Positions 7,101 to 43,300 of a stretch of 64,000 nt of DNA are shown one piece after another. A model generated the notes under the pieces. The model was not told the DNA's origin. It did no database searches and saw only the letters and a list, made by a program, of their open reading frames with translations. The stretch is from Macrostomum lignano (taxonomy: Eukaryota). Location: the NCBI GenBank assembly GCA_002269645.1, contig NIVC01003466.1:1-64000 (forward strand). Reading direction: 5' to 3'. Each line of letters begins with the position of its first letter. Position 1 is the stretch's first letter. A program made the position numbers and the translations under genes.

Positions 7101-7905
7101 ATTCCATGGCTGCAGCTGTACAGTTAAGGGGTCTCTGACTTTGACTGGGGGCTGAGCAGGCGTATATGTATGAATTCACTTGAAAATTGAGGTGGGGACT
7201 ATGTACATGTTTATTGTACAGAGAGTTGGTTTTGAAGATTGTGCGACTTGCGCAAGTGGTTGAATTGCAAAACTTTTGGAGTATCTCGTATGTCACTTTA
7301 ACGGTTCGTATTTCTATCTGCTATAGTATTGTGCTCGATCTGCTCATAGTGCTTGATCTCATCATAATGTTTGATCTGCTTATAGTACTTGATCTGCTCA
7401 TAGTGTTTGACCTACTCATAGTTTTTTATCTGCTCATAGTAGTCTATCTGACTATTTTACTTATTATTCATTGTCTCATTCGCAATACCTGACTTCCTTA
7501 TCTGCTCATGGATATTTTTCATCAGCTGATTGCAATTTATCTGCTCATAGGACTTTACAAAAGTTCTGTGCTTGCCTTTTAAAGTCATCAAACTTCTTCT
7601 CATGCGCTCCCAGTCTCAGCTTTTTATGCAGCCAGCTACTCATAGTTGAGTAGTATAATTCGGTTATAAACTCCTCACCATCCACTTCACGCTCGCCTGT
7701 GGTGTTGTTCCACCGCATGTCCAGGCCGGGCCGCAGGTGGCTGTCGTAGCGAGCCCCGGCCAGGATCTGGTCCAGCACCCGGGACACGCGGACCAGGTGA
7801 GACGCGTTGCCTAGCAACGGCACCTGGTCGGCGTCCTCATTGCTGGAATTTGCGGCTGCGATTGAGACCAGGCAGCAGGTCAGCAGCGCGAGGCTGATGA
7901 GGAGC
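1143..7905 (-). CDS. Cys-loop ligand-gated channel subunit, GABA-A alpha/GRD-like (5' exon not located)
   Basis: Exons 7905-7679, 4965-4895, 3679-3450, 3381-3299, 2676-2482, 2406-2254 and 1612-1143, all GT-AG and phase-consistent (475 codons plus stop). Motifs: signal peptide, [22 protein letters not shown], Cys-loop [16 protein letters not shown]1 [23 protein letters not shown]2 [25 protein letters not shown]3 and M4. Confidence 0.92.
1616..2245. repeat. 12-bp minisatellite (ATGAGTGAGTTC / ATGACTGAGTTT) filling the last GABA-R intron
   Basis: About 52 units; source of the spurious MNSV/HELT/MSEF ORFs. Confidence 0.95.
2735..3250. repeat. 23-bp minisatellite arranged as a 46-bp dimer
   Basis: Alternating GAACACCCATGAAAACAGTGTGT and GAATACCCGTGAAAAAAGTGCGT in a GABA-R intron. 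Confidence 0.9.
3742..4745. repeat. 24-bp minisatellite (AATCTCACCTTTGATCTCATCCTC)
   Basis: About 41 units, intronic; source of the [15 protein letters not shown] ORFs. Confidence 0.95.
5145..5510. repeat. 22-bp minisatellite (CAGAACCCTCTGACACACAGTT)
   Basis: About 16 units in a GABA-R intron. Confidence 0.9.
5984..7288 (-). mobile_element. Full-length mariner (DD34D) transposon, 1305 bp, in a GABA-R intron
   Basis: TIRs CGAGGGATACTCTAAAAGTTTTGCAATTC (5984 onward) and its reverse complement ending at 7288 (2-nt deletion, 1 mismatch). TA duplication at 5982-5983 and 7289-7290. Confidence 0.93.
6047..7107 (-). pseudogene. Mariner transposase with one frameshift
   Basis: ATG at 7107 (MELNREQNR). 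HTH region, [14 protein letters not shown] and ITGDETF lie in one frame; HHDNAPAH and [10 protein letters not shown] (34 residues between the last two D) lie in another. The frame switches at about 6365-6400; stop at 6047. Confidence 0.9.
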
Positions 7906-14674: not shown

Positions 14675-16470
14675 ATGCAGCAGCAGAACTCGGCGCTGGC
14701 GCCAATCTCTGAGGGTGCCGCTAGGGCGCCACAGCCGCCGCCTGTCAATGAGCAACAGCGGCAGCTGCTGCAGCCGAGACGGAGTCTCCGGTATCCAACC
14801 TCGGTGACAACGCCGCTGTCGGAGCAACCCAGACGGCTCACCTTGATGCCGGCGCCCACCAGTGACAAGCCGACGACCGACGGTCACGTGGTGCCGAAAC
14901 AGCGACGACAGTCTCGACGTCGGCCAAGCTCGATTCGCTCGTCGGAGCGAAGCCAGGGCCGTCCGTCGGCTGGAGTGCTGGCTGGCCTGGTGGAGAACAC
15001 CTACCGGATGGGCCCGGCTCAGCCGTTTATTGTTGACGCTGCCGAGGCGCTGATTAAAGAGCGACTGGAGACAAATTTGAAGCGCTACAGCTACAATGCC
15101 CAGTCTGCCAAGGTGCGGTCCGCCTGCTGAGATCATGGGGTGATTCTCGTGTGTGGTTAATAGTGATTCTCGTGTGGTTAATAGTGATTCTCGTGTGGTT
15201 AATAGTGATTCTCGTGTAGTTAATAGTGATTCTCGTGTGGTTAATAGTGATTCTCATGTGGTTAATAGTGATTCTCGTGTAGTTAATAGTGATTCTCATG
15301 TGGTTAATAGTGATTCTCGTGTAGTTAATAGTGATTCTCGTGTGGTTAATAGTGATTCTCATGTGGTTAATAGTGATTCTCGTGTAGTTAATAGTGATTC
15401 TCATGTGGTTAATAGTGATTCTCGTGTGGTTAATAGTGATTCTCATGTGGTTAATAGTGATTCTCATGTGGTTAATAGTGATTCTCATGTGGTTAATAGT
15501 GATTCTCGTGTAGTTAATAGTGATTCTCATGTGGTTAATAGTGATTCTCATGTGGTTAATAGTGATTCTCATGTGGTTAATAGTGATTCTCATGTGGTTA
15601 ATAGTGATTCCCGTGTAGTTAATAGTGATTCTCATGTGGTTAATAGTGATTCTCATGTGGTTAATAGGGATTCTCATGTGGTTAATAGTGATTCCCGTGT
15701 AGTTAATAGTGATTCTCATGTGGTTAATAGTGATTCTCATGTGGTTAATAGTGATTCTCATGTGGTTAATAGTGATTCCCGTGTAGTTAATAGTGATTCT
15801 CATGTGGTTAATAGTGATTCTCGTGTGGTTAATAGGGATTCTCATGATGGCTAATAGTGATTCACGTGATTATTTATAGTGATTCTCATGATGGTTTTTT
15901 AGGTGATCCTTATTGTGGCTAATTGTGATTCTCATAATGGCTAGTTGTGGTTCTCTGGATGGCTGATTGTGATTCTCTCATGATGATTAATTGTAAATAT
16001 CACGATGACGGTTATGGTGATTCTCATGCTGGTTTATAGTTCTCGTAAAGGTTTCCCTCTTCTCACAGAAAGACATGAATGATCCGTATGGCTCAGTCCT
16101 AGTGATTCCGGAGAGTCATCCAAGATTTGTGCATGATTCTAAAAGCACAAACCCCATTCTTTCCGAAATAACTGTACACGTGCATGGCGATTCTGTCAGC
16201 CTGCATCCGCTCTCGCATTTCAAGGTGATGTCGACCAACATGGCTCAGGAGATAAAAAACAAGATCAAACAGCAGCTGCTTCGGCAGGGCCCGAACTCCC
16301 GGTACAAGCTGGTGGTGCTGGTCACGGTGACCGATGTGAACAGGCCAGCAGGGGAGTTCGCCTCCCGGATGCTCTGCCAGGCAGCCACAGGAGACGCCTG
16401 CGCCAAAGCCGAATTTCGCGGCAACAGGGCGGCCGCGTGGGCTGCGGTGTTCGCCCTCTACTGCGAGTAG
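14675..16470 (+). CDS. Tctex1-domain dynein light chain (TCTEX1D/TCTE3-like), 227 aa
   Basis: Exons 14675-15112 and 16225-16470 (AAG|GTGCGG donor, TTTCAAG acceptor, phase 0). Tctex-1 motifs ENTYRMGP, RYKLVVLVTV and WAAVFALYCE; Arg/Ser/Pro-rich N-terminal extension. Confidence 0.88.
15150..15850. repeat. 21-bp minisatellite (GTGGTTAATAGTGATTCTCAT) in the Tctex intron
   Basis: About 33 units; source of the VVNSDSH/INHMRIT ORFs. Confidence 0.95.
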
Positions 16471-19890: not shown

Positions 19891-20924
19891 GTGCATGTCA
19901 AGCATGAAAAAGCGGCATTTCAAAAATGAAAGAAGCGTCATGTCGAACATAAAAGATTATTTGGGGAATTTGCTAAAAAGTCAATGCTGAGAGGTTAAAA
20001 CCTACATTTAGTTTATTCAGAAATTTTTATTGCATTTCTTTGTTGGCTCCCTAACGGTGGGAGTTGATTGATAGTTTAACACTAAACATTTTATCCACCC
20101 ACACGGTTTCCCACCAAACCATCCAATCTAGGGTAATAAATGATCCCAAGAACTAAGACACAAAGCGGACAAATTTAGATATAATTAACGATTTTTCAGG
20201 TAAACTTTCAAAACACGAAATGACGCGCGCTGGAAATGTGTATAATTAAAAAAATTAAACAGTAGACAGTCACAATGAGCGAAAGTAAAGTGCAAAATTA
20301 TTTCTAAACAAATGGCATACAGCACTACGAATTCATTAATTAACATGGAAAAGATTTGAGAAAATCTGGGGTGTAAATTGAAATGTACAGCTTGTACTTG
20401 AATAGAAGTGTGTATATATAGAAGCAAGCTTATGCTAATAAAAGTCTATTTAAATAAGTGCTTGCAGCAAAACAACTTGGTCGCTAAGGCTATTGTCATG
20501 ATTGGAGAGTCGATAAAAAATCAAGCAAATTAACAAAAAAGGTGGAGACAAGCTGCTAAATATTTTTTATAAAGCAGTTACCTTCTGCCAATAGTTAACT
20601 TGAATCAAATTTTTCAGTATACATTTACTACTAGTAGTAAGAAACATTGCAATTCGAATTTAAATAGTATTTTAAAATATACAATGAAATTGCATATAAA
20701 ACTGCATCGACAATGAAAAACTAAGGAAATCAAAATCAAACTTGACAAAAAACAATTAGAAACCCAAGAATTAAAGCTTAAGTAAAGCATTTTTAGTTAA
20801 AACACAAATTCCTTGAATAAAAAACTAGTCAATCAAATCTTTGATCTGGTGCTTGGCTTGCGTTTTAAATTAACTAAAACTGATTTTACGTTTGATCAAG
20901 ACTAACTGTGATGCATTATACAGA

Positions 20925-21850
20925 AAGCAAACCAAAAACACCGGAAAGAAACCAGAAACACACTGGAAGCAAACCAGAAACACACCGGAAGCAAACCAGT
21001 AACACACCGGAAGCAAACCAGAAGCACACCGGAAGCGAACTAGAAGCACACCGGAAGCAAACCAGAAGCACACCGGAAGCGAACCAGAAACACACCGGAA
21101 GCAAGCCAGAAACACACCGGAAGCAAACCAGAAACACACCGGAAGCAAACCAGAAGCACACCAGAAGCACACCGGAAGCGAACCAGAAGCACACCGGAAG
21201 CGAACCAGAAACACACCGGAAGCAAGCCAGAAACACACCGGAAGCAAACCAGAAACACACCGGAAGCAAACCAGAAGCACACCAGAAGCGAACCAGAAGC
21301 ACACCGGAAGCGAACCAGAAACACACCGGAAGCAAGCCAGAAACACGCCGGAAGCAAACTAGAAACACACCGGAAGCAAACCAGAAGCACACCAGAAGCA
21401 AACCAGAAGCACACCGGAAGCGAACCAGAAGCACACCGGAAGCAAGCCAGAAACACACCGGAAGCAAACCAGAAACACACCGGAAGCAAACCAGTAACAC
21501 GCCGGAAGCAAACTAGAAACACACCGGAAGCAAACCAGAAGCACACCGGAAGCGAACCAGAAGCACACCGGAAGCAAGCCAGAAACACACCGGAAGCAAA
21601 CCAGAAACACACCGGAAGCAAACCAGTAACACGCCGGAAGCAAACTAGAAACACACCGGAAGCAAACCAGAAGCACACCAGAAGCAAACCATTAGCACAC
21701 CGGAAGCGAACCAGAAGCACACCGGAAGCAAGCCAGAAACACACTGGAAGCAAACCAGTAACACACTGGAAGCAAACCAGAAGCACACTAGATTAGAAGC
21801 AAACCAGAAACACACCGGAAGCAAACCAGAAGCACACTGGAAGCAAACCA
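20925..21850. repeat. 22-bp minisatellite (GGAAGCAAACCAGAAACACACC)
   Basis: About 42 units with patterned variants. Confidence 0.95.
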
Positions 21851-22212
21851 GAAAGATAATATGAAGCAAACCAGATAAAAAACGGTGGGGGTAACAGAAT
21901 TAAAAACATTTCACCATACCAGACTTGCATGGTTGACCCCAAAGCCAAGCTCACTATTGTAGAAATTGCAATTTATAGACAAGTAAAATAATTAGCCTAA
22001 AGTACATAAGAAAACTTAAGAAAACACAAATAATGTCAGTTATACGCCAATGTACAGCATAATCAATATAATGAATAGAAAAATACTGTCAAAAAATTGG
22101 TTGATCAGACTTGACATTACAGCCGAGAGCAGTGCCTGCATACATTATTATAACCTGTTCACACGGCATGATAAATGAGGGTCCTTTCCGAAAAAAAACT
22201 TACTAAAGCAGT

Positions 22213-25200
22213 TTAACGGCAGAGTCGCATTGTCATCTCCTTCTGCAAATGGGTGTAGTAAGAGATTAAGTGCAACTACTAACACAAATGAAAAGCTATT
22301 TGAGAATTAAAAATGCATTACTAACCAGAGGCTCAAGTTCCTTCTTATCAACCAGACCGAATTCGGTGACAAAATAATAGAAATGCTTGTAGCAGGTGTT
22401 CACGTGCGCCTCCTGACAAACAATTATAGTTGCGAATACGCGTATTGAATATGCGAAACGTTAATTAGTCTATTAATTAGTAGCTATTTTTAGTATGGAG
22501 ACTTGCAGTCTCAATGCACTACTAAATGAGGGTGTGCAGTGTCCCTTTGCACTACTAAATGAGGGTGTGCAGTGTCCCTTTGCACTACTAAATGAAGGTG
22601 TGCAGTGTCCCTTTGCACTACTAAATGAAGGTGTGCAGTGTCCCTTTGCACTACTAAATGAGGGTGTGCAGTGTCCCTTTGCACTACTGAATGAAGGTGT
22701 GCAGTGTCCCTTTGCACTACTGAATGAGGGTGTGCAGTGTCCCTTTGCACTACTGAATGAAGGTGTGCAGTGTCCCTTTGCACTACTGAATGAAGGTGTG
22801 CAGTGTCCCTTTGCACTACAAATTGAAGGTGTGAATTGTCCCTTTGCACTACAAATTGAAGGTGTGCATTGTCCCTTTGCACTACAAATTGAAGGTGTGC
22901 ATTGTCCCTTTGCACTACTGAATGAAGGTGTGCAGTGTCCTTTGCACTACAAGATGAAGACGTGCAGTGTCCTTTGCACTACAAGATGAAGACGTGCAGT
23001 GTCCTTTGCACTACAAGATGAAGGCGTGCAGTGTCCTTTGCACTACAAGATGAAGACGTGCAGTGTCCTTTGCACTACAAGATGAAGACGTGCAGTGTCC
23101 TTTGCACTACAAGATGAAGGCGTGCAGTGTCCTTTGCACTACAAGATGAAGGCGTGCAGTGTCCTTTGCACTACAAGATGAAGGCGTGCAGTGTCCTTTG
23201 CACTACAAGATGAAGGCGTGCAGTGTCCTTTGCACTACAAGATGAAGGCGTGCAGTGTCCTTTGCACTACAAGATGAAGGCGTGCAGTGTCCTTTGCACT
23301 ACAAGATGAAGGCGTGTAGTGTCCCGTTACCAACTTAGGCGGAAGTGCACCAAAGGGAGTGCTCAGTCGCAAAAATAGGGACATATTTCTCCTTAAATGT
23401 CTTCACAATAAGAGCAATAGAACTCACGGCGCCAATATTCCTCAGCCGGTCAAAATGGTGAATATACACGTGAACAAACACGCGGAACAATCTAGTTAGT
23501 ATTTTCTTTACGCTGGCCGTGTAATTCTTTGGGAACGGTGTCTGAGAGTCGCCAGGAAATAGGCGATCATCGTTAATCTGCTCCTCTACCCAGTCCATCA
23601 GTAGGCCAATGTACACTGGAGCGGGCAGAGAGGTGGGCTTCTTATACTGCACTTTGTCAGCCCACTGGTACTCGTACTTGGCGCCGCCGCTCATTTTCGG
23701 ACAGGCTGCCTCGGTGCAGTGCTCCGACACTGTGCCATAGATAAGGCTGATGCGATTGTAGAAATCTACAACGTGAACAGCTAGCCAATCATTGTAGTCC
23801 TCGCCGCGAGGCAATTTGACAGCCTCTTTGAGATCGATGCCGGCGCTTAGAGAGGCCATGGCATTCTTGTGCAACTGTTGGCGCATTGTACCAGGCGTGA
23901 ATTTCTTCTGCGGTTTGAATGTCTGCTCGGAAATTTGTGCAGTTAGGTGGGCTTTTAAGAGCTAGATAAGGACACTGCCTACTAATGAGTAGCGAGGAGA
24001 GATCACACAGCAACAAATCGCTTATTAATTAGTCCTGGCAGTTAAATAAAGATTCTGGGTCATTTGATTAAGTTAGTCTGATGTAGTATTTTTGCAGGTT
24101 ACTTTAGAAGTTAGAAGCACTTTGATAGTAAAGAGCTAATCTGTCTGTCTGTTAAAATGCATAAATAGTTCAGATAAGTCAATAGTAAACAGTTTTATAT
24201 AATTATACAATAATTCTAAAAGAATTGCTCTACTTTGTTACAAAAAGCTGATATATTACTTAGAGTAGAAAGTGTATTATAATTCATTGCTGTTTAAACT
24301 AGAGATCTAGAAATATCAATTTCATTAATGGTTTAAAAGTATTTAGCTAATTAAAGTCTATACCAATGGCAATAAGTTCAGCTAGTAGGCTTCTATGAAG
24401 GTTAAGGTAGGTGCAGCACAAGGCCTAGAACAATGTGTATGCCTTGTGCAATCTTCTAAGTCTTTGAACTACATTTCTTTCCCATTACTATAGATTTTCT
24501 TACTTGTAGGCCTATAACATTGTTATAAATGCCTTATTGTTAAAATATAACCAAAATTTTGAAATGATTTTCAATGAATGTATAAAAATTCAAAATTCAA
24601 ACTGAAATTATTTTGATACAAAATTAGGTTCCAAATTTAATATTGAAATTGAAATTGAATTTTAATCTATCACTATATTATACTTATAGCTTTTATTATA
24701 AACCATAGTCTTGTAGATGCGCCAGCCAGGTGGGAACATTTTTAGCTGCCATGGAAGTTGTGTGCGCTGCACAGCCAGCAGTTTTGCTTTATACGTGAGG
24801 CATGCCCATGAGGCATTGAGACAATAAAGGACCTTTTTTGCAGTTGCAACAATAAAGGACCTTTTTGCAGTTTTGCATTATATGCACTACATGAAGACTT
24901 TTAATTAACTTTCTAAAATCCAACATTACATATAAAAATATCAACATAGATTATAATTAATTCTTTCTACCGACGCGTTTCGGACCAACAATGGCCATCT
25001 TCAGGGTCTGGTATATTTTTAACTCATACAACAACTTTATAAGTGAACAAACGTTAACTGTACAGTCTAAAGGGCATGTCATGGGCAGAATTTTCCAAAA
25101 TGTTAAGCATAGATTGCAAGTACATTGTTTAGACTTGTGCCTTTACTTAGAATACCTTGAGCAAATGGCCCGCACCACTATGGGAGAGCTGAATATTCAG

Positions 25201-27529
25201 ATTAGGTTTTTGGTCTTTAACCAAAATTAAATTAAATTAAACTTATTCAATAAATTCAATAAAAAATTTAATAAACTTATTAAATATTCAGATTAGGTTT
25301 TTGGTCTTTAACCAAAATTAAATTAAATTAAAGACCAAAAACCTAATCTGAATATTCAGCTCTCCCATAGTGGTGCGGGCCATTTGCTCAAGGTATTCTG
25401 AGTAAAGGCACAAGTCTGAACAATGTACTTGCAATCTATGCTTAACATTTTGGAAAATTCTGCCCATGACATGCCCTTTGGACTGTACAGTTAACATTTG
25501 TTCACTTATAAAGTTGTTGTATGAGTTAAAAATACACCAGACCCTGAAGATGGCCATTGTTGGTCCACAACGCGTCGGTAGAAAGAATTAATTATAATCT
25601 ATGTTGATTTTAACTTTTGTATTTCTCTGCCTGCTAAAGCGTGCTACCTTACCTCAAAAAATATCAACATTGTTCTACAAGAGTAACATTCTAAAACAAC
25701 AAGTAAACTCTCCAACACTATCTATGTCATTAATAGATACACAACTTTATAAACATATAAATCTCAAAAAGATAAAAATGTAAAAGCTTTTCTGTTATAG
25801 GACAATTTCTAGATTTTAAACTTTATTTTTGTTAGATGTATTAATTTGATATAGACTTTTATCTATGGCATGACCGCCACTAGCATTACAGTACAACTTG
25901 AATGAGCAGTGCCTCATTCTAAGCCCATAATCAATAAAAGTGATATTGAGAGCTGCTTAACTGGAGAGCTTAAGAAATAACTGAGTTAGCTAAAGGCTAT
26001 ATCAAAATTGGTATTATAGTGTCTGTGCATTCAGAACCAACAGTTTTACTTTTTACAAATAACAAAATATATAATTATTTAAATTTTCTTTTTATTCAAA
26101 TACTTGAAATAAGTTATCATGGTCATTGAAACCATGGTCATGTTTATTTCCAATAAGGGAAATGCACCAAAAGATCATCTATAGTTGTTTTTACGCTAGC
26201 CATTTATCCCAATTAATTTTTCTATTAATTCTTATGCAAAGGCTAATTTTTGTCTATAATTATACTGGAGATTTTTGGTATAACTATAAGGAAATGGACT
26301 ATATGCTGTGTACACTAAGCATGCGGCTACATATCAATGGAAATGGCTCTATGCCACACATATTCATAGAGCCACCTAGGTGGGAATTTTTATCAAAAAA
26401 GTGCATCAACTGATTCAACAAGACAATGGATTATAAAGACCTAATATATTTTTAAAGTTGGCATAGAAGAACTAAAAAAGCAACTTAACTTTTAGTATAT
26501 TTTTAATTTAGGCTTCTATTGCTACAGAGTTAACAAAACTGATTTTAATTTTGGCATATACCTGCCATGATCAAAGCTGCCTATAGGTATAGTAGTAACA
26601 AGCTAGGTGTATAGATAATTATTCTTATGTCAACAATAAACTACACTACCTTCCTCTCTAATTATATTAAGCCTATACTATAGTCCATACTCTAGAAGGA
26701 ATATATCACCATCGCGCATTTGGTTTGGTCTAAAAATTGTTGCATGCATTGGCGTGTATTTGGATATTGCATGCCAAAAGTGGCTTATTGGCATGCTATT
26801 GCATGAAATAGCTGGCATAGAATGTGGCCTGGCATGATAGTGGGACATGTTTTATTGAGAAAAAAGTTTGTGAAAAGACATGATGTTGTAAAGACATACT
26901 TATTTTTTTGCAATATGACAAGTAAATTTTAATGTGCCAAAAATGTAATACTAATAGGCCTATATTTGATTGCTACAAAAGTTTTTAAAAAATTGAAGAC
27001 AGTTTATTTTAAATACATTTTTAACCAAAAAAGTTGCATGTTTTTTTCTATAACATATTAGTTTGACATGCTTTTGCTTTGCTTGGCACTGGCGTGCATC
27101 TACTTGGCATTGGCATGCATTGGTTTAGAGCATTCTAGTTCCAGTGTGCACTCAACATGATCTAGACTATGGACTATAGTCTTGCTACTTGCTTGCTTTT
27201 ATAAAAAATATCAATTTTTTGTTAGAAGAAACAGCTCTAAAAGGCCTAAAAAAGTGGTTTTTTAATAGCATAGATAGGCCTAGCATGATCAATCATACAA
27301 CATACTGATTCAAATAGGGCCTAGTGCAATAAATATCTAGCTAGGCCTAGTACTAATAGCTGCCTGCTGGCTTTTCGAGCTTAAATTTTAGAAAAATTTT
27401 ACTCACAATTACCGTTACTTACTGCTTGAAACGACTACAAAAAAAATATAATATCAATAATAAATAAGGGTTCCTATTTTGGCTTACCTTTTCTCGATTA
27501 AAAAAATCGATAAACCCACCAAACGCCAT
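22213..27529 (-). CDS. MOB3: MOB kinase activator 3, 217 aa
   Basis: Exons 27529-27488, 23922-23428, 22412-22326 and 22242-22213, all phase 0. [14 protein letters not shown]|TFKPQKKF...[13 protein letters not shown]...[14 protein letters not shown]...GA|[14 protein letters not shown]...ELEPL|KEMTMRLCR aligns end to end with the MOB3 subfamily. Confidence 0.95.
22505..23320. repeat. 33-bp to 32-bp minisatellite in MOB3 intron 2
   Basis: GCAGTGTCCCTTTGCACTACTAAATGAGGGTGT changes to the 32-bp GCAGTGTCCTTTGCACTACAAGATGAAGGCGT near 22930. Confidence 0.93.
24969..25007 (-). ncRNA. Minimal type-I hammerhead ribozyme motif, intact core
   Basis: ACC-CUGAAGA-U-GGCCA(UUGU)UGGUC-C-GAAAC-GC-GUC^GGU: 3-bp stem I, stem II, palindromic ACGCGU stem III and GUC cleavage triplet (cut between 24972 and 24971). 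Confidence 0.75.
25541..25579 (+). ncRNA. Hammerhead motif copy with mutated core (GAAA to ACAA)
   Basis: Identical to the 24969-25007 copy except at 25567-25568; predicted inactive. Confidence 0.65.
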
Positions 27530-28309
27530 TTACTTATTTTTAATTTATATGGAGAACACAGAAAGCAGATATTCAAATCGGGCTTGTCGCCAGCAACTCC
27601 GGACACTGCTGTTACCCAAAAAAGAACCACCACAGAAGCAATCCTATATATCCGCGATATCAAACAACGGGTCAGATTGAAATTAATTTAAATAAGGGCC
27701 TAGTTAAAAACTGTTTAATAGTATAAAAAATTTTTACTTGTGTCTACGCGTCATGTTGTTTGAATCTATAGAATTCCAAGTCTTTTTTACTTTTTATGTA
27801 TTAAATTGATATAAATATTCTCTTCTTATTTAAAGTTGACTTTAAAAAGTTGACGACTTCAAAGCTATTTAATGTACGCTTTTTTAGATCCAGGATCTCC
27901 CTGTAGGTATACTCCGTAACCACTAGTCAGACGACAACCCGGCCGCGCCCATGGGCTGGTAAAATGAAATAACTCCCATTTAGTAGGCTGGTGCTGGCGT
28001 CCAATCTGCTGTATGGCACCCAAATGAAATCACGTACTAGTAGAATAGATAAATTATGAAAAAGATTCTCCCTAGTTGATCACAAAATCAATAAAGTCAC
28101 GACATGCTATAGTTCAAAATCGCATTTTGTCTTGTGCAATAATTCGCCTACAGGTATATCTCAGCTAATTTAATTGATACAATCAATATTGCCATTACGG
28201 CTGTTTATTGATTGTTGCTTTAACCTTTTCTTGACTAGTCTACTTGCCAACATATCCGTTCCCGACGGCTTGGACCGAAATCGTGCCATAGACATTTTTG
28301 CGCTCACGA

Positions 28310-28870
28310 CTGAGGGAATTACTGAGATGTCAAGGCTTACTGAGGGAATTACTGAGATGTCAAGGCTTACTTGGGGAATTGCTGAGTTGTCAAGGCCTAC
28401 TGGGGGAATTGTGAGAAGTCAAGACTTACTGGAGGAATTACTGAGATTCGAGACTTACTGGGGAATTACTGAGATTTCAAGGTTTACTCGGGGGAATTGC
28501 TGAGTTGTCAAGGCTTACTGGGGGAATTGCTGAGACTTCAAGGCTTACTGGGGGAATTTCTGAGATTTCAAGGCTTACTCGGGGAATTGCTGAGATTTCA
28601 AGGCTTGCTGGGGGAATTGCTGAGATTTCAAGGCTTGCTGGGGGGAATTGCTGAGATGTCAAGGCTTACTGAGGGAATTACTGAGATGTCAAGGCTTACT
28701 GGGAGGAATTGCTGAGATGTCAAGACTTACTGGGGGAATTACTGAGATGTCAAGGCTTACTGAGGGAATTACTGAGATGTGAAGGCTTACTGGGGAATTA
28801 CTGAGATGTCAAGGCTTACTGGGGGAATTGCTGAATTGTCAAGGTTTACTGGGGGAATTGCTAAGATGTC
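28310..28870. repeat. About 30-bp minisatellite (GGGAATTACTGAGATGTCAAGGCTTACTGA)
   Basis: About 18 units upstream of the MOB3 ATG. Confidence 0.9.
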
Positions 28871-30554
28871 ATCAAGGCTTATGGCATATTGAGCTCCTTC
28901 TGCGGACCAGAATATGCCCAGGCCAATGACGATATGCCCTAAGAGTTTGTGCTTGAAAGGATAAGTACTATTTGCTGAATGAGAAAGGGTTTTGGGCTGA
29001 TGAAGGAAACTTTGGCTGGTGAAGGTTTTGATTCATGGCAATTTATTTTTGCCAAAAATGAGAAAAAGTAAGTTTTGATTAATGGATTTTGAATAATAAG
29101 TAGGTTTTTACTCATTGGCCAAAATAAAAACCACTTGGCGTCATTCTTGCGCCCCCCAACGGGGGGCTTAAATTGAATAATATACGAAATTCACAAGATG
29201 TCAATTTTAACTAAGGCGAAGGCCCTGAATGAAGCTTTTGTCTTACTTCATTTCTTACATGTAATCTTTGGCGAAACAAATATGAATAGACTGAGGCAAA
29301 GCGCAAAGGCTAAGGAAATAGAGCCAAACAGAAAATCTTAGCGCGAAAGAAAGAGACCAACAAAATTATAAATCGTGCCATCAGTCTCATCGTGGTTAAT
29401 ACACTGTAAATATTCAATTTGGCTGTGGATGCGAACTATTTTACAGCTAGTTCTTTTATCTCTAAAACAAAAACTCCATGAATGTAAACTCTATACATAA
29501 AGCACTCTTGAGAAATTTTTACAAGTGCGATTTTTATAAATACTGTCCTTACTGTCTGACTCGGTCAATCCTTTGCATTACATGTAGGTTAGAACCAAGA
29601 AGCACGATCGAAGAGGCAATTGAAGCAGCTGGTCTTTTGGGATTTTATAATTGGCATTCTCTGGCCGAGCTTCGTGTCGCTTTGAGGATTAGGAATTGTA
29701 CATCCATTTGCTCTGAGGGTTGAGCTCGTTTGCAATTATCCCACCAAAGTCAAGCGTGCGCCGCGAAAATCCCCATGCCACCCCTCTAGACTTTCTCCCC
29801 CTACCGCCCACACCCTACATGTACGCACAGATCCTCATTCCGCTCCGCGAGCCTTCATTTCCATCCAAACGGCGTCTTCCCTTCGCTTGGGCATAGTGAA
29901 TTTTTTTTTGCGTCTCAAAGTCCCACGAGGACATTTTTAGTTTATAGCTGGCAGTGCTCACAGCTACCATTCTCGAAAGCGATCCCATGCTACGTTAAGC
30001 TGATGTGGCCCTGTGCCTGCCGCCTCTTCCCAACAAACTCTACACTTGCATGCGATCCTATATTGAGAGCAGTTCGCAGCATGAATTTTACAAAATCTTA
30101 TATTGCGGGCATACAGCAAGCATGCAAAAAAACTTCTCAAGCATGTAAATTGTCTAGATGGGCCGCGCGCGGCGCTGGTAAAAAATGTGCAGGGAGCGCA
30201 TATCCTTGAGCTTACTTGAAGCGTATAAAACGGCGCTGAATGAAACGAATTTCGTTAACGGACAAATTGCGAATCAAGGATGCTTTTCTAACCCTCCAAA
30301 GTTGATTCACAAGATGATCGAAGTTTTTTTAATGACACTGAGTCTGGCTATAGAAAGCAAGCAAAGTTCGGGCGAAATTTCAATAGCGCAGCTCGCAATA
30401 TTTTGCATTTTTCTTAACTAAATTTTCTTAGCGGAGTCTACGTATGATAGAATTATCCTTTTAATGTCATGTATTGAACAGACTTTTAGCAAAATCCATT
30501 TCGAGCATACTATATTGATAATGATAGTACTCCCTTAGCATAGCACAGAGTGGA

Positions 30555-30947
30555 GGGGCAGGAGATCAGCAGATGGGCCGTCGTCTCCTCTCCATCGCCG
30601 CAGAAGCGGCAGTTGGGTGCCACGTCAACGCCGATGGCGGCCTGGAAGCCCCGCAGGGCCGGGCAGCGGTCGGCGCGCAGCTGGCAGATCAGCCGCTCCT
30701 GCCGCCGCGTGAGGTCGCTCGTCGGCGGAGGCGGCAGGCGGCCCGCCGTGCAGGCAAAGTGCCAGGCCAGCGAGCTCGTGCTCGCCGCCTCGGTGGCCAC
30801 CGCGTTGTAGATCTGGTGCCAGCGGGCGAGGCAGTGGCGGCGGACGGCAGCCTGCGCGGCAGCCAACGGGACGGGCGCGGTGCCTTGCGCCAGCGTGGAG
30901 CCTCGCTTGGCGATCTCGTCCACGGCCTCGTTGCCGGGGAGGCGCAT
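30555..30947 (-). mobile_element. Truncated RNase H-bearing LINE 3' fragment (I/Loa/R1-like)
   Basis: LPGNEAVDEIAK (end of the RNase H domain), LTRRQERLICQLR and CCHC knuckle CRFCGDGEETTAHLLISC; a GC-rich island in AT-rich DNA. Confidence 0.8.
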
Positions 30948-40300: not shown

Positions 40301-43300
40301 GCCCTCTCCCGTTACTCTGCTGGGGGCTACAGTCCTCTCCCGTCACTCTGCTGGGGGCTACAGCCCTCTCCCGTCACTCTGCTGGGGGCTACAGCCCTCT
40401 CCCGTCACTCTGCTGGGGGCTACAGCCCTCTCCCGTCACTCTGCTGGGGCTACAGCTCTCTCCTGTCACTGCTGTGTGGGGCTACAGTCTCCTGCACTCT
40501 GCTGAGGAGGGGGTTACATCCCTCTCCTGCCACAACCAGAAGCAAGCAATGCCAAAATTCAAACCTGGAGGTCTCTTTTAAAATGCCAGCCACAATGCCC
40601 CAGGTGTTCCAGCAAAACAAAATCCGTCAATCCGACACAGCAAATGAAATCGTGCTAATTCCCGAGCACTGCAGTCCCGCATTAATGTCTAGACGGGGTC
40701 CTGAGACGAAGAAAAACAAATCAATCGTGCCTGACTGACAGTCTGGCCCTGTCTAGATCCCAGCAGTGTTTTGGCGACGTCTTCAGAAAATAGACCCCGG
40801 CTGAGCACAGACAGTCTCAGTACAACTGTTGACAGTTTTGCCCGGAAATTTCGCTCCATTTGTTCGTTCAACAGTGTCGCAGCATTTTGTGCTTTCATAA
40901 TCCCCTATAATCCACCTCTGTTGTAACAATGTCTCTCGTATAAGTACTACTGACTCACTTTGGGATTCACTATCTCACTCATTCTCTCCACTCATTCTCT
41001 CACTCATTCTCTCACTCATTCTCTCACTCATTCTCTCACTCATTCTCTCACTCTCTCACTCATTCTCTCACTCATTCTCTCACTCTCTCACTCATTCTCT
41101 CACTCATTCTCTCACTCTCTCACTCATTCTCTCACTCATTCTCTCACTCATTCTCTCACTCATTCTCTCACTCTCTCACTCATTCTCTCACTCATTCTCT
41201 CACTCTCTCACTCATTCTCTCACTCATTCTCTCACTCTCTCACTCATTCTCTCACTCATTCTCTCACTCTCTCACTCATTCTCTCACTCATTCTCTCGCT
41301 CATTCTCTCACTCATTCTCTCACTCATTCTCTCACTCTCTCACTCATTCTCTCACTCATTCTCTCACTCATTCTCTCACTCATTCTCTCACTCATTCTCT
41401 CACTCATTCTCTCACTCTCTCACTCATGAACTCGCTCATGAAACTTACTCATGAACTCACTCATGAACTCACTCATGAACTCACTCATGAACTCACTCAT
41501 GAACTCACTCATGAACTCGCTCATGAACTCACTCATGAACTCGCTCATAACTCACTCATGAACTCCCTCATGAATTCACTCATGAACTCCCTCATGAACT
41601 CACTCATGAACTCCCTCATGAACTCACTCATGAACTCACTCATGAACTCACTCATGAACTCACTCATGAACTCACTCATGAACCGATTCATTAACTCACT
41701 CATGAACTCACTATAATCTCACTCATAAACTCCCTCATGAAGTCACTCATAAACTCACTCATGAACTCACTATAATCTCACTCATAAACTCCCTCATGAA
41801 ATCACTCATGAACTTACTCACGAACTCACTCGTGAAATCACTCATTAACTCATTAACAAACTCGTGAGAACTCACAAAGTGCCCCTTCCCTGAAACTAAA
41901 GCTCCGCACAATTCTGAGCAAGCTCTGTCTCAATTTTTCCCCGCCATTCCAATCGCTCTAACAAGTGGCCGCCACAGCCACGCCTCGGGGCAGATTGGCC
42001 TCGGAAAGGCGCTTCAATGGTCTCGAGCGCGACGCCCCCCTTCTCAATAGTCCCAACCTCAGTCTCCCGCTTCGCTGCTTTTCATCTTCCCTCAAGCGAC
42101 CACTTCATTCTGGCTGACGGGTGAGGGAGTGGGTCAAAGACGAGAACAGAAAGAGGCCGGCAGCAGAGCATCAGCGGTTTGCTGCTTGCCAGGAAAAGAG
42201 GCAAAAGTGCAGCTGCCCAACAGCTCCATCCGTTGGGCTGCTTGGCTCTTGGGGAAGAGGTTGACTGAGGTCAGCGCACTCTGAGCACTCTCTGTGCAGC
42301 TTCAAAAATAGAATTTTTATTAGAATTCGATGTAAAATCTATGAAAAAATCAAATAAATCGAATGATTGTACTTTTAAACTTACTTCTTAAAAGATTGAC
42401 TTGACTGCTTGGAGAAGAAGAATTTCAGAGCTTTAATATTTGCTTTATTCCGGTCAAGGACTACTTAAGTAGGCCGACTATAGTGGTCCTTGAGCCAGGG
42501 TTAAGTAAACAGTGCCAATGTTCAAGCAACTGACGAACTTCGGATGCAGAAACTGGGACATGGGTTCCAGCTTTCAGCTGGGAAAACGAGAGAGAATAGC
42601 GGAGCGGGAAAAAGAAGAGGCAGAGAGCAAGGTTGGAAGGCAGACTGAATCAGGCATAAACAGTTTTAACCATTGTTTCTGCATGAAATTGTTTTATGCA
42701 GCACAGTCAGCTGCAGCAGCGACATCAGGCAAGTGAGGGGCCGCCAAACCAGGTATCTGGCGGCGCCAAAAAAATGAGTGTCTGAGGGCGCCAAATTGGG
42801 TGTCTGGCGGCGCCAAAAACTGGTTGTCTAAGTGCCCCAAAATTGGATGTCTTGGAGCGCCAAAAAATTGGTGTCTGATGGCGCCAAAAATGGGTGTCTG
42901 AGGGCGCCGAAACCTGGGTGTCTGAAGGCGCCGAAACCTGGGTGTCTGAGGGCGCCGAAACCTGGGTGTCTGATGGCACCAAAAACTGGGTGTCTGAGGG
43001 CGCCGAAACCTGGGTGTCTGAGGGCGCCAAAAACTGTGTGTCTGAGGGCGCCAAAAAGTGTGTGTCTGAGGGCGCCAAAAACTGTGTCTGAGGGCGCCAA
43101 AAACTGTGTGTCTGAGGGCGCCAAAAACTGGGTGTCTGAGGGCGCCAAAAACTGGGTGTCTGAGGGCGCCAAAAACTGAGTGTCTGAGGGCGCCAAAAAC
43201 TGGGTGTCTGAGGGCGCCAAAAACTGGGTGTCTGGCGGCGCCAGAACTGGGGCGTCTCCTCGGATTCTACTCCGGGAAAAAGCCCCCATTCTACTTTGCG

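What the first reader, a model, noticed from the sequence alone, without database searches (positions are those of the whole stretch)
24969..25007. Intact minimal hammerhead ribozyme in the sense strand of MOB3 intron 1
Seen: the minus strand reads ACC CUGAAGA U GGCCA UUGU UGGUC C GAAAC GC GUC^GGU, with both catalytic boxes, stem II, a 3-bp stem I and a stem III reduced to the palindrome ACGCGU. Established: minimal type-I hammerheads with palindromic stem III are associated with Penelope-like elements and cleave mainly as dimers. Inference: it is transcribed with every MOB3 pre-mRNA, so a Hippo-pathway-family gene carries a potentially self-cleaving intron.
Basis: partly seen in the sequence, partly recalled or inferred. 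Interest (0 to 1): 0.78.

Follow-up and report, generated by a model that had tools for sequence, protein, structure and literature searches.

The report
Retroelement hammerhead fossil in a MOB3 intron
The hammerhead ribozyme motif is real and sits in intron 1 of a flatworm MOB3-like gene. It is the passenger of a roughly 700-bp Penelope-like retroelement insertion found in only one of three copies of the gene, and it is probably locked inside a long RNA hairpin, so it is an ordinary transposon relic rather than a gene-regulatory ribozyme.

Summary
**Observation: confirmed.** The minus strand 25007-24969 reads ACC-CUGAAGA-U-GGCCAUUGUUGGUCC-GAAA-CGCGUC-GGU. It is a minimal type-I hammerhead (min-HHR) with every core position intact.

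**Where it sits.** The window is Macrostomum lignano. The motif lies in the sense strand of intron 1 (27487-23923) of a MOB3-like gene.

**What carries it.**
- The motif belongs to a 698-bp insertion (24948-25645) made of two head-to-head 273-nt copies.
- The second copy (25541-25579, + strand) has a dead core (GAAA changed to ACAA).
- A 37-45-nt tail is present at one end only, and a 14-bp (imperfectly 25-bp) target-site duplication flanks the insertion.
- The other two copies of the gene in the same assembly have clean empty sites.
- Inverted 5'-truncated copies, a one-sided tail and a 3'-proximal min-HHR are the published hallmarks of Penelope-like elements (PLEs).

**The motif class.** A covariance model built from unrelated metagenomic min-HHRs scores the motif at 33 bits (E about 7e-7). 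Rfam's hammerhead models miss the whole class.

**Activity.** In the pre-mRNA the HHR is predicted to be fully paired with the antisense copy in a hairpin of about 300 bp (-530 kcal/mol). Only one intact sense copy exists, so no cis dimer can form. Self-cleavage is therefore unlikely.

**Verdict.** A new member of a known kind, of low interest. The link to an RT/GIY-YIG ORF could not be tested.

The parts
24969..25007 (-). Intact minimal type-I hammerhead (min-HHR). It consists of helix I ACC/GGU, CUGAAGA, an extra U, helix II GG-CCA/UGG(U)CC with loop UUGU, GAAA, the palindromic helix III ACGCGU, and C17 at 24972. The predicted cleavage site is 24972|24971.
   Evidence: Sequence read. Descriptor and shuffle test. 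Covariance model R1 scores it 33 bits, E about 7e-7.
24948..25220 (-). Left copy of the 273-nt retroelement 3'-end unit, in the sense orientation of the MOB3 transcript. The HHR occupies unit nt 214-252. The copy ends ...AATTATAATCT directly at the target-site duplication, with no tail. An AT-rich 5' extension runs on to 25241.
   Evidence: Inverted repeat, alignment, mismatch count.
25221..25327 (.). Rearranged head-to-head junction. It holds a 21-nt AT-rich extension, a 41-nt spacer (25242-25282), and a 50-nt exact duplicate (25283-25332) of 25192-25241. That duplicate forms a perfect 29-bp hairpin with the start of the right copy.
   Evidence: Family D5 and pair I2; self-blast; sequence.
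25328..25600 (+). Right copy of the 273-nt unit, antisense to the MOB3 transcript. It differs from the left copy at 7 of 273 positions.
25541..25579 (+). Degenerate hammerhead copy. GAAA has become ACAA (G12A and A13C); everything else is identical.
   Evidence: Alignment. Model R1 scores it only 19.9 bits.
25601..25645 (+). 3' 'tail' extension present at this end only. It is 37 nt if ATGTTGAT belongs to the unit, 45 nt otherwise.
   Evidence: Sequence. It matches the optional 30-40-bp PLE tail described in PMC8557442 and PMC11167929.
24923..24947 (.). Target-site duplication, copy 1. It is identical to the empty site; the perfectly duplicated part is 24934-24947.
   Evidence: Family D7. Empty sites in L002 and L129.
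25646..25670 (.). Target-site duplication, copy 2. It matches 21 of 25 positions; the perfect part is 25657-25670.
23923..27487 (-). Intron 1 of the MOB3-like gene (GT at 27487-27486, AG at 23924-23923). It is AT-rich (31-33% GC) and hosts the insertion.
22213..27529 (-). MOB3-like gene (Mob1/phocein family, 217 aa, identical to BOX15_Mlig017823g1). CDS exons are 27529-27488, 23922-23428, 22412-22326 and 22242-22213.

Best explanation
The motif is the hammerhead carried near the 3' end of a Penelope-like retroelement (PLE) or of a short non-autonomous element mobilised by PLE machinery.

**The insertion event (shown, apart from the timing).** A single retrotransposition placed a 698-bp unit in intron 1 of one copy of the Macrostomum lignano MOB3-like gene. 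The unit has two 5'-truncated 273-nt copies arranged head to head. One copy carries the optional 37-45-nt tail, and a 14-25-bp target-site duplication flanks the unit. The timing is inferred: the event happened after that gene copy diverged from the other two.

**Role in the parent element (from the literature, not tested here).** The min-HHR is thought to process tandem or pseudo-LTR transcripts. It would act as a dimer through the palindromic helix III, and possibly only with help from the element's protein.

**Role at this locus (inferred).** Here the HHR is a passenger.
- It remains intact only because the insertion is young: the arms differ at 2.6% of positions.
- Its inverted twin has already lost G12 and A13.
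- In the MOB3 pre-mRNA the antisense copy is transcribed first. The HHR is predicted to be sequestered in a near-perfect RNA duplex of about 300 bp.
- Significant self-cleavage of the intron is therefore not expected.
For: **The insertion is a mobile element.**
- Inverted repeat: 305-nt arms by ungapped extension. The true homologous arms are 273 nt with 7 mismatches.
- Presence/absence: the 698 bp at 24948-25645 are missing from both other gene copies (L002/L130 = NIVC01002331.1 and L129 = NIVC01000803.1). Each has a single copy of ATGTTGATATTTTTATATGTAATGT at the site, and the flanks align at 92-96%.
- The tail is present at one end only.

**These are the published PLE hallmarks.**
- High 5' truncation, an inverted 5'-truncated copy adjacent at the 5' end, a 30-40-bp tail often at one end only, and an HHR near the 3' end or in the pseudo-LTR (PMC8557442).
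- The tail corresponds to alternative internal start sites of reverse transcription (PMC11167929).
- In the flatworm Schistosoma, 'dual min-HHRs ~100-700 bp apart in opposite strands' were reported (PMC4209133).

**The motif fits the min-HHR consensus.** It has the extra nucleotide between 9 and 10.1, G10.1-C11.1, and palindromic 15.2-16.2 plus loop 3 (PMC4209133).

**Independent check of the motif class.**
- The pattern CTGANGANGG..CCGAAACGCGTC occurs in at least 120 metagenome contigs.
- In the 95 low-GC contigs, positions left free by the pattern agree with the window's motif: N7 = A in 59, extra nucleotide = U in 77, helix I of 3 bp or more in 59. In the 26 high-GC contigs only 2 have such a helix I.
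- 9 of 11 base pairs show changes on both sides.
- A covariance model built from 32 of these sequences gives the window motif 33 bits and the dead copy 19.9 bits.

**Arguments against activity at this locus.**
- The fold of 25680-24900 (minus strand) has an MFE of -530 kcal/mol, z = -38.7. In a similar fold (25700-24880, -540.7 kcal/mol), 38 of the 39 HHR nucleotides pair with 25541-25579.
- The HHR-competent monomer fold is -4.6 to -5.0 kcal/mol, against -7.4 for the isolated MFE.
- The double-hammerhead dimer is -18.7 kcal/mol, against -27.3 for the MFE dimer.

**No sign of selection on the HHR.** Two of the 7 arm differences fall in the 39-nt HHR, where about 1 would be expected by length, and they hit catalytic positions.
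Against: **The link to a PLE coding region is missing.**
- No reverse-transcriptase or GIY-YIG coding sequence was linked to this 273-nt unit. No PLE protein motif was found in the window or in about 100 kb of other M. lignano loci.
- No further copy of the unit was found anywhere I could search.
- The assignment to PLEs therefore rests on insertion anatomy and motif class, not on a full-length element.

**Anatomy that does not fit perfectly.**
- The two arms start at the same unit position. This could mean a complete short non-autonomous element rather than two independent truncations.
- The upstream copy of the target-site duplication has 4 mismatches in its last 11 nt, so the duplication length is uncertain (14 or 25 bp).

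**Limits of the folding argument.** Thermodynamic folding ignores co-transcriptional kinetics, tertiary contacts, helicases and proteins. Some cleavage in vivo is not excluded.
Confidence: 0.85

Rival explanations
1. Host-relevant self-cleaving intron. The intact sense-strand hammerhead cleaves MOB3 pre-mRNA, as a monomer, as an intermolecular dimer or with protein help, and so modulates expression of a Hippo-pathway-family gene.
For: - The core is fully intact and in the sense orientation within intron 1.
- The motif class is a genuine ribozyme class with covariation.
- Weak dimeric cleavage has been published (PMC4209133), and so has protein-assisted cleavage (PMC11167929).
Against: - The motif is present in only 1 of 3 gene copies that encode the identical protein. 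It is a lineage-specific transposon insertion with a target-site duplication.
- Its twin copy decayed at catalytic positions, so there is no sign of selection on the HHR.
- The HHR is predicted to be buried in a duplex of about 300 bp with the copy transcribed just before it.
- No second sense copy exists for a cis dimer.
- Single min-HHRs gave no detectable cleavage in vitro (PMC4209133).
- Helix I is only 3 bp, and the HHR fold is not the MFE even in isolation.
Confidence: 0.05
2. Foldback or MITE-type DNA transposon. The 305-bp inverted repeat is the terminal inverted repeat of a cut-and-paste element that merely contains a hammerhead-like sequence.
For: - The inverted repeat is long and near-perfect, with a short centre.
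- The insertion is flanked by a direct repeat and has a clean empty site in the paralogous copies.
- Mariner-type transposases exist in this genome.
Against: - The ends are asymmetric: a 37-45-nt tail sits at one end only.
- The target-site duplication is 14-25 bp, far longer than the 2-10-bp fixed duplications of DDE transposons (my knowledge).
- One junction shows microhomology (ATGTTGAT) between the element's 3' end and the target, as expected for target-primed reverse transcription.
- The arms carry a motif of a class that the literature ties to PLEs (PMC4209133, PMC8557442). That motif points outward, 21 nt from the 3' end of each arm.
Confidence: 0.05
3. Chance resemblance: the hammerhead boxes and stems arose by accident in AT-rich intron sequence.
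For: - The motif is short.
- Rfam hammerhead models do not report it.
Against: - Only 2 hits occurred in 3628 shuffled windows.
- The motif sits in a mobile element in duplicate, at the same position of both arms.
- It shares unconstrained features with a covarying natural class: N7 = A, extra U, GG after the cleavage site.
- The Rfam negative is uninformative.
Confidence: 0.02

Closest known systems
Minimal hammerhead ribozymes (min-HHRs) of metazoan Penelope-like elements (Cervera & De la Pena 2014, PMC4209133). The closest cases are the Schistosoma mansoni (Cercyon) families and the Drosophila virilis Penelope variant.
   Same: - Type-I topology with a CUGANGA/GAAA core.
- An unpaired nucleotide between A9 and G10.1, and a G10.1-C11.1 pair.
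- A helix III that is reduced and palindromic (ACGCGU), which implies dimeric action.
- A short helix I (3 bp here; 4-5 bp in Schistosoma, 2 bp in D. virilis).
- A bulged nucleotide inside helix II and a 2-nt palindromic insertion in helix III, as in the D. virilis variant.
- Occurrence as 'dual motifs 100-700 bp apart on opposite strands', as in Schistosoma.
   Different: - Helix II is 5 bp with a bulge, against 7-8 bp in the Schistosoma families.
- No full-length PLE with this motif was recovered, so membership of a named PLE clade is unknown.
- I found no report of hammerheads in Macrostomum.
Complex PLE insertions: pseudo-LTR, inverted 5'-truncated copy and 30-40-bp tail (Craig et al. 2021, PMC8557442; the 2024 Mobile DNA paper on the Anolis element, PMC11167929).
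   Same: - Head-to-head 5'-truncated copies.
- A tail at one end only.
- A target-site duplication of variable, longish size.
- The HHR close to the 3' end.
- An AT-rich target.
   Different: - Only 273 nt of each copy are present.
- There is no ORF and no direct (tandem) pseudo-LTR.
- The centre of the junction carries an extra 50-nt duplicate and a 41-nt spacer.
Animal non-LTR retrozymes and other HHR-bearing non-autonomous elements (bioRxiv 10.64898/2026.07.22.740005, PMC5680766; also Schistosoma Sm-alpha and newt satellite 2, both from my knowledge).
   Same: - A short (about 300 nt) non-coding unit with a type-I HHR whose helix III needs a partner copy.
- Thought to be PLE-derived and mobilised in trans.
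   Different: - Retrozymes are head-to-tail tandem arrays that can yield circular RNAs. Here the two copies are inverted, so no unit-length RNA can be released by two sense cleavages.
- The preprint reports retrozymes as depleted from introns, whereas this one is intronic.
Conserved intronic hammerheads of amniotes (HH9, HH10; Rfam RF02275 and RF02277; from my knowledge).
   Same: A hammerhead in the sense strand of an intron of a protein-coding gene.
   Different: - Those are canonical, monomer-competent ribozymes with tertiary loop contacts, conserved at orthologous positions across species.
- This one is minimal, lineage-specific, absent from the paralogous copies, and not detected by those models.

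Membership tests
Hammerhead ribozyme (type I, minimal variant) | Catalytic core C3 U4 G5 A6 N7 G8 A9 ... G12 A13 A14 A15.1 ... U16.1 H17 | tested here: met
   All positions are present in 25007-24969 on the minus strand. The twin copy at 25541-25579 fails at G12 and A13.
Hammerhead ribozyme (type I, minimal variant) | Helices I and II flank the core, with G10.1-C11.1 closing helix II | tested here: met
   Helix I is ACC/GGU (3 bp). Helix II is G-C, G-C, a U bulge, then C-G, C-G, A-U, preceded by an unpaired U. The descriptor was met only 2 times in 3628 shuffles.
Hammerhead ribozyme (type I, minimal variant) | Mg2+-dependent site-specific self-cleavage after H17 | not testable with these tools
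   This needs in vitro transcription or in vivo end mapping. Folding predicts the active fold is disfavoured as a monomer, as a dimer and in context.
Hammerhead ribozyme (type I, minimal variant) | Match to a curated Rfam hammerhead covariance model (Rfam hammerhead families) | tested here: not met
   There was no hit at the gathering threshold or at E<=10. The same models also miss 8 control min-HHR loci, so the failure reflects the models' need for a helix III, not the motif.
PLE-type min-HHR class | Extra nucleotide between 9 and 10.1; palindromic 15.2-16.2 plus loop 3; family-wide covariation in helices I and II | tested here: met
   The extra U and the ACGCGU palindrome are present. In a set of 32 metagenomic motifs of the class, 9 of 11 pairs have changes on both sides. 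Model R1 built from them scores the window motif at 33 bits, E about 7e-7. Caveat: the retrieval pattern was derived from this motif, so the fixed positions agree by construction.
Penelope-like element insertion | Insertion behaves as a mobile element: presence/absence with a target-site duplication | tested here: met
   The 698 bp are absent from two paralogous copies that have intact empty sites. The duplication is 14 bp perfect, or 25 bp with 4 mismatches.
Penelope-like element insertion | 5'-truncated copies in an inverted (head-to-head) or partial tandem arrangement | tested here: met
   Two inverted 273-nt 3'-end copies with their inner ends joined. The criterion comes from PMC8557442.
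Penelope-like element insertion | Optional 30-40-bp 'tail' at only one end of the insertion | tested here: met
   A 37-45-nt extension (25601/25609 to 25645) follows the right copy. The left copy ends at the shorter site. The criterion comes from PMC8557442 and PMC11167929.
Penelope-like element insertion | Family includes copies that encode a TERT-like reverse transcriptase with a GIY-YIG endonuclease, with this sequence as their 3' end or pseudo-LTR | not testable with these tools
   - No RT or GIY-YIG signature was found in the window or in the M. lignano loci then held, L002-L007.
- The whole M. lignano assembly cannot be searched by DNA here.
- Attempts through ORF look-ups and protein searches failed.
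- In one metagenomic locus of the same motif class (L032), a GIY-YIG-like motif lies 982 nt upstream on the same strand. Pfam did not confirm it.
Non-LTR retrozyme | Head-to-tail tandem repeats, each with an HHR, able to release unit-length RNA | tested here: not met
   The two copies are inverted, not tandem. Only one sense HHR is intact.
Conserved intronic hammerhead of a host gene | Conservation at the orthologous or paralogous intron position | tested here: not met
   It is absent from both other copies of the same gene in the same assembly.

The most novel reading that the evidence does not exclude
**Cleavage reading.** The one intact sense-strand min-HHR does cleave in vivo. This could happen co-transcriptionally, with a PLE-encoded protein acting as chaperone, or after the hairpin is unwound or edited. 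It would selectively lower output of one of three otherwise identical MOB3 gene copies. That would be a natural example of copy-specific dosage tuning by a transposon-borne ribozyme.

**Hairpin reading.** The roughly 300-bp intronic hairpin could be diced into small RNAs that silence the parent PLE family.
Probability: 0.06. Interest if true: 0.55.

Novelty: new member of a known kind. Interest (0 to 1): 0.12.

Why it matters
It matters mainly as a calibration case. Minimal hammerheads occur in thousands of copies in many invertebrate genomes because Penelope-like elements carry them. An intact one in an intron is therefore expected and does not imply ribozyme-based gene regulation.

The locus is a tidy, fully delimited example of PLE insertion anatomy. 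It has inverted truncated copies, a one-sided tail, a microhomology junction, a target-site duplication and matched empty sites. The organism is a flatworm model in which I found no report of hammerheads or PLEs in the papers I could search.

It also shows that Rfam's hammerhead models are blind to this abundant class. A simple model built from environmental sequences detects it.

Tried and rejected
**Rfam**
- Whole window at the gathering threshold and 24700-25300 at E<=10: no hammerhead family. The weak SNORD93, UPD-PK2, BSnc119 and SSU hits are chance.
- Control run: Rfam also misses bona fide min-HHRs, so I dropped this as evidence.

**Looking for other copies of the unit**
- Window self-blast: only the two arms and a 50-nt fragment.
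- L002-L007: nothing.
- Exact look-up of the two 79-aa antisense ORFs that run through the arms: not on record.
- Homology search with that ORF: no candidate.
- Metagenome scan with the exact motif: 0 hits.

**Looking for PLE coding sequence**
- Pfam on ten large window ORFs: a ligand-gated channel exon, a mariner-type transposase and a LINE-type zf-RVT fragment, but no PLE.
- Regular-expression search for GIY-YIG, YxDD and motif A in six frames of the window and L002-L007: nothing.

**Sampling more of the M. lignano genome through multicopy TE proteins**
- The mariner and LINE ORFs are not on record.
- The mariner homology search gave a single M. lignano protein on one contig. It holds no min-HHR.
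- The weak R1 hits in L003 and L004 are not hammerheads: they lack GAAA.

**Other**
- Pfam on the GIY-YIG-like stretch of metagenomic locus L032: no GIY-YIG hit.
- Supplements of PMC8557442 and PMC4209133 are not held.
- I considered the sense-frame peptide at the 5' end of the arms (24 codons to a TAA) as a possible ORF C-terminus. I rejected it because it is preceded by a stop in AT-rich low-complexity sequence and is no longer than chance allows.
Full report
**1. The observation**

The minus strand of the window from 25007 to 24969 reads ACCCTGAAGATGGCCATTGTTGGTCCGAAACGCGTCGGT, exactly as reported. All hammerhead core positions are present:
- CUGAAGA (C3 to A9, with N7 = A);
- GAAA (G12 to A15.1);
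- U16.1 and C17.

Helix I is ACC/GGU. A15.1 to U16.1 form the 6-nt palindrome ACGCGU. The predicted scissile bond lies between 24972 and 24971.

I would redraw helix II. After A9 comes an unpaired U. Then come G10.1-C11.1, G-C, a bulged U on the 3' strand, C-G, C-G and A-U, closed by the loop UUGU. [quoted passage not shown] A bulge inside helix II and a 2-nt palindromic insertion in helix III are described there for the Drosophila virilis variant.

A descriptor encoding these features hit the window once. It hit 3628 approximately dinucleotide-preserving shuffles twice. A looser sequence-only pattern had an expectation of 0.15 per window.

**2. Organism and gene**

- A tblastn search with a MOB3 sequence located exons on the minus strand.
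- The spliced translation is 100% identical to the Macrostomum lignano protein BOX15_Mlig017823g1 (P0001, 217 aa, Pfam Mob1_phocein). MOB3A/3B orthologues of other animals match at about 70%.
- The first 14 codons ([14 protein letters not shown]) lie at 27529-27488 and are followed by GTAAGC.
- Exon 2 begins at 23922 after a CAG acceptor. Exons 3 and 4 are at 22412-22326 and 22242-22213.
- Locus L001 (NIVC01003466.1) is the window itself.

Intron 1 is therefore 27487-23923, and the motif lies in it on the transcribed strand. The intron accounts for the AT-rich block at 24-28 kb.

**3. What the motif is part of**

The repeat finder reports an inverted repeat with arms 24937-25241 and 25307-25611. 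Aligning the arms shows a second copy of the motif on the plus strand at 25541-25579. It is identical except that GAAA has become ACAA, so G12 and A13 are lost.

Trimmed to unambiguous homology, the arms are 273 nt: 24948-25220 on the minus strand and 25328-25600 on the plus strand. They differ at 7 positions, and 2 of those are the core changes. The hammerhead occupies unit positions 214-252, 21 nt from the unit's short 3' end.

The two copies face away from each other, with 5' ends inward and 3' ends outward.
- The centre (25221-25327) is rearranged. It holds a 41-nt spacer and a 50-nt exact duplicate of the left copy's inner end, and that duplicate forms a perfect 29-bp hairpin with the start of the right copy.
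- The left copy ends ...AATTATAATCT and runs straight into ATGTTGATATTTTT.
- The right copy continues ...AATTATAATCT-ATGTTGAT-TTTAACTTTTGTATTTCTCTGCCTGCTAAAGCGTGCT. This gives a tail of 37-45 nt at one end only.
- ATGTTGAT is both the continuation of the element and the start of the target. That is a microhomology junction of the kind expected for target-primed reverse transcription (inference).

**4. It is an insertion**

The assembly contains three contigs that encode the identical P0001 protein. In the other two (L002/L130 = NIVC01002331.1 and L129 = NIVC01000803.1), intron 1 aligns to the window on both sides at 92-96% identity. Window positions 25645-24948 are missing from both. Each has one copy of ATGTTGATATTTTTATATGTAATGT at the site.

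In the window this 25-mer is duplicated on both sides of the insert, at 24923-24947 and 25646-25670. Fourteen nucleotides match perfectly, and 21 of 25 match overall.

The hammerhead is therefore carried by a 698-bp mobile-element insertion that is specific to one of three gene copies.

On age: substitutional divergence between the arms is 2.6%. Intron divergence between gene copies is about 2.4-2.8% in substitutions, plus indels. The insertion is thus roughly as old as the split of the copies. At about 1.3% per arm, a 39-nt motif has about a 60% chance of being untouched, so its intactness needs no selection (my arithmetic).

**5. Which kind of element**

The published structural hallmarks of Penelope-like elements are:
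- strong 5' truncation;
- an inverted 5'-truncated copy adjacent at the 5' end, forming inverted repeats;
- a 30-40-bp tail, often at only one end;
- hammerhead motifs in the pseudo-LTR or 3' region (PMC8557442).

The tail corresponds to the interval between two alternative internal reverse-transcription start sites (PMC11167929). In Schistosoma, most min-HHRs are solitary remnants of truncated PLEs, and some occur as pairs 100-700 bp apart on opposite strands (PMC4209133).

The insertion shows every one of these features. What I could not show is a coding link.
- No RT or GIY-YIG signature exists in the window or in the M. lignano loci then held, L002-L007.
- I could not search the whole M. 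lignano genome by DNA.
- All indirect routes failed.

Whether the 273-nt unit is the 3' end of an autonomous PLE or a short non-autonomous derivative stays open. The identical start point of both arms mildly favours a short unit or a snap-back origin.

**6. An independent look at the motif class**

Their names suggest that many are termite-gut samples, presumably carrying host DNA (my reading).

| Feature left free by the pattern | 95 low-GC contigs | 26 high-GC contigs |
|---|---|---|
| N7 = A | 59 | 11 |
| Extra nucleotide = U | 77 | 12 |
| Helix I of 3 bp or more | 59 | 2 |

- The two nucleotides after the cleavage site are GG in 65 of all 121 motifs.
- In 32 non-redundant motifs, 9 of 11 pairs show changes on both sides. 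The covariation score is 0.49, against 0.19 for shuffles and 0.06-0.15 for slid partners. These sequences were pre-selected for pairing, so the percentage paired is biased, but the diversity of pair types is not.
- A covariance model from this set puts the window motif first in the 64 kb (33 bits, E about 7e-7) and the mutated twin second (19.9 bits). Caveat: the pattern was derived from the motif, so the fixed positions agree by construction.
- One locus (L032) has a GIY-YIG-like motif (IYKLT...YIGHT...RYKEH) 982 nt upstream on the same strand. Pfam did not confirm it.
- Rfam's hammerhead families detect none of eight control loci. This explains the negative results.

**7. How it most likely behaves here**

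The MOB3 pre-mRNA is transcribed from the minus strand. The polymerase first makes the antisense of the right copy and then the sense left copy.
- Folding 25680-24900 gives a near-perfect hairpin of about 300 bp at -530 kcal/mol, against -166 ± 9 for shuffles (z = -38.7).
- In a similar fold of 25700-24880 (-540.7 kcal/mol), 38 of the 39 hammerhead nucleotides pair with 25541-25579.
- In isolation the hammerhead-competent fold (-4.6 to -5.0 kcal/mol) is not the MFE (-7.4).
- The double-hammerhead dimer (-18.7) loses to an alternative duplex (-27.3).
- No second sense copy exists for a cis dimer.

The literature points the same way. Single min-HHRs gave no detectable cleavage, and dimers or trimers cleaved only weakly (PMC4209133). 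The Anolis PLE hammerhead cleaved only in the presence of the element's protein, and no RNA-seq ends were found at its site (PMC11167929).

I therefore infer that the motif is an inactive or nearly inactive passenger at this locus. The long intronic hairpin could instead feed dsRNA pathways, but that is speculation.

**8. Verdict**

- The PLE association and the intron and strand placement are right.
- The functional inference is not supported.

This is a new member of a well-known and very abundant class. It is nicely delimited and is not surprising. Confidence is 0.85 for a PLE-type retroelement relic and about 0.05 for host-relevant self-cleavage.

Noticed in passing
window 22213-27529; L129; L130 (= L002): Three copies of the MOB3-like gene in the assembly encode the identical 217-aa protein. 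Exon 2 differs by 1 nt in 512, while intron 1 differs by about 2.5% in substitutions plus many indels. This fits the recent large-scale duplication reported for M. lignano (my knowledge) together with purifying selection on the coding sequence.
   Followed up: partly
window 22409-23388 (intron 2 of the MOB3-like gene): Two adjoining minisatellites with 33-nt and 32-nt periods, about 30 units in all, fill most of intron 2. The three gene copies span 5317, 4613 and 4102 nt. The window exceeds L129 by 704 nt, about the size of the 698-bp insertion. The shorter span of L130 (NIVC01002331.1) was not traced to a cause.
   Followed up: partly
window 20835-21900 and 28285-28923: An 11-nt-period tandem array of about 1 kb lies just 3' of the gene. 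A 30-nt-period array lies just 5' of it. Both give long spurious ORFs in several frames.
   Followed up: no
window 25646-25656 versus 24923-24933: The inner 11 nt of the upstream copy of the target-site duplication differ from the empty site at 4 positions. Three of these are A-to-C changes on the plus strand. Either the true duplication is only 14 bp, or the fill-in synthesis was error-prone.
   Followed up: no
window 6115-7296 (-): An open 393-codon mariner/Mos1-type transposase ORF with HTH_48, HTH_32 and Transposase_1 domains. It is 93% identical to BOX15_Mlig033664g1. Close relatives appear in short environmental contigs.
   Followed up: partly
window 30510-30947 (-): An ORF with a weak zf-RVT match (CRFCGDGEETTAHLLISCP). 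It looks like the C-terminal part of a LINE-type reverse transcriptase and is unrelated to PLEs.
   Followed up: no
window 42893-43009 (+): A 24-nt tandem repeat whose unit, GGUGUCUGAAGGCGCCGAAAC, matches only the helix II plus GAAAC part of the min-HHR model (12-13 bits). It is not a hammerhead: it lacks the CUGANGA box in register and has no cleavage site.
   Followed up: partly
window 1143-2240 (-) and 16075-16470 (+): An exon of a ligand-gated ion channel (Neur_chan_memb, E = 4e-17). About 8 kb from the hammerhead lies a neighbouring gene whose product carries a Tctex-1 domain.
   Followed up: no
L008-L127 (metagenome contigs; e.g. L014, L099, L031; L114 at 27 and 2317): A very abundant min-HHR family, ACUCC-CUGAAGAUGG...CCGAAACGCGUC-GGAGU, occurs in low-GC metagenome contigs, many apparently from termite-gut samples. 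L114 has two identical copies 2290 nt apart on one strand, which resembles a pseudo-LTR. L032 has a decayed GIY-YIG-like motif 982 nt upstream.
   Followed up: partly
L115 1178-1259 and L046 1339-1420: tRNA-like Rfam matches (34 and 28 bits) lie in two of the termite-type contigs that carry min-HHRs, 570-1060 nt from the motif. They may be SINE-like modules and were not examined.
   Followed up: no
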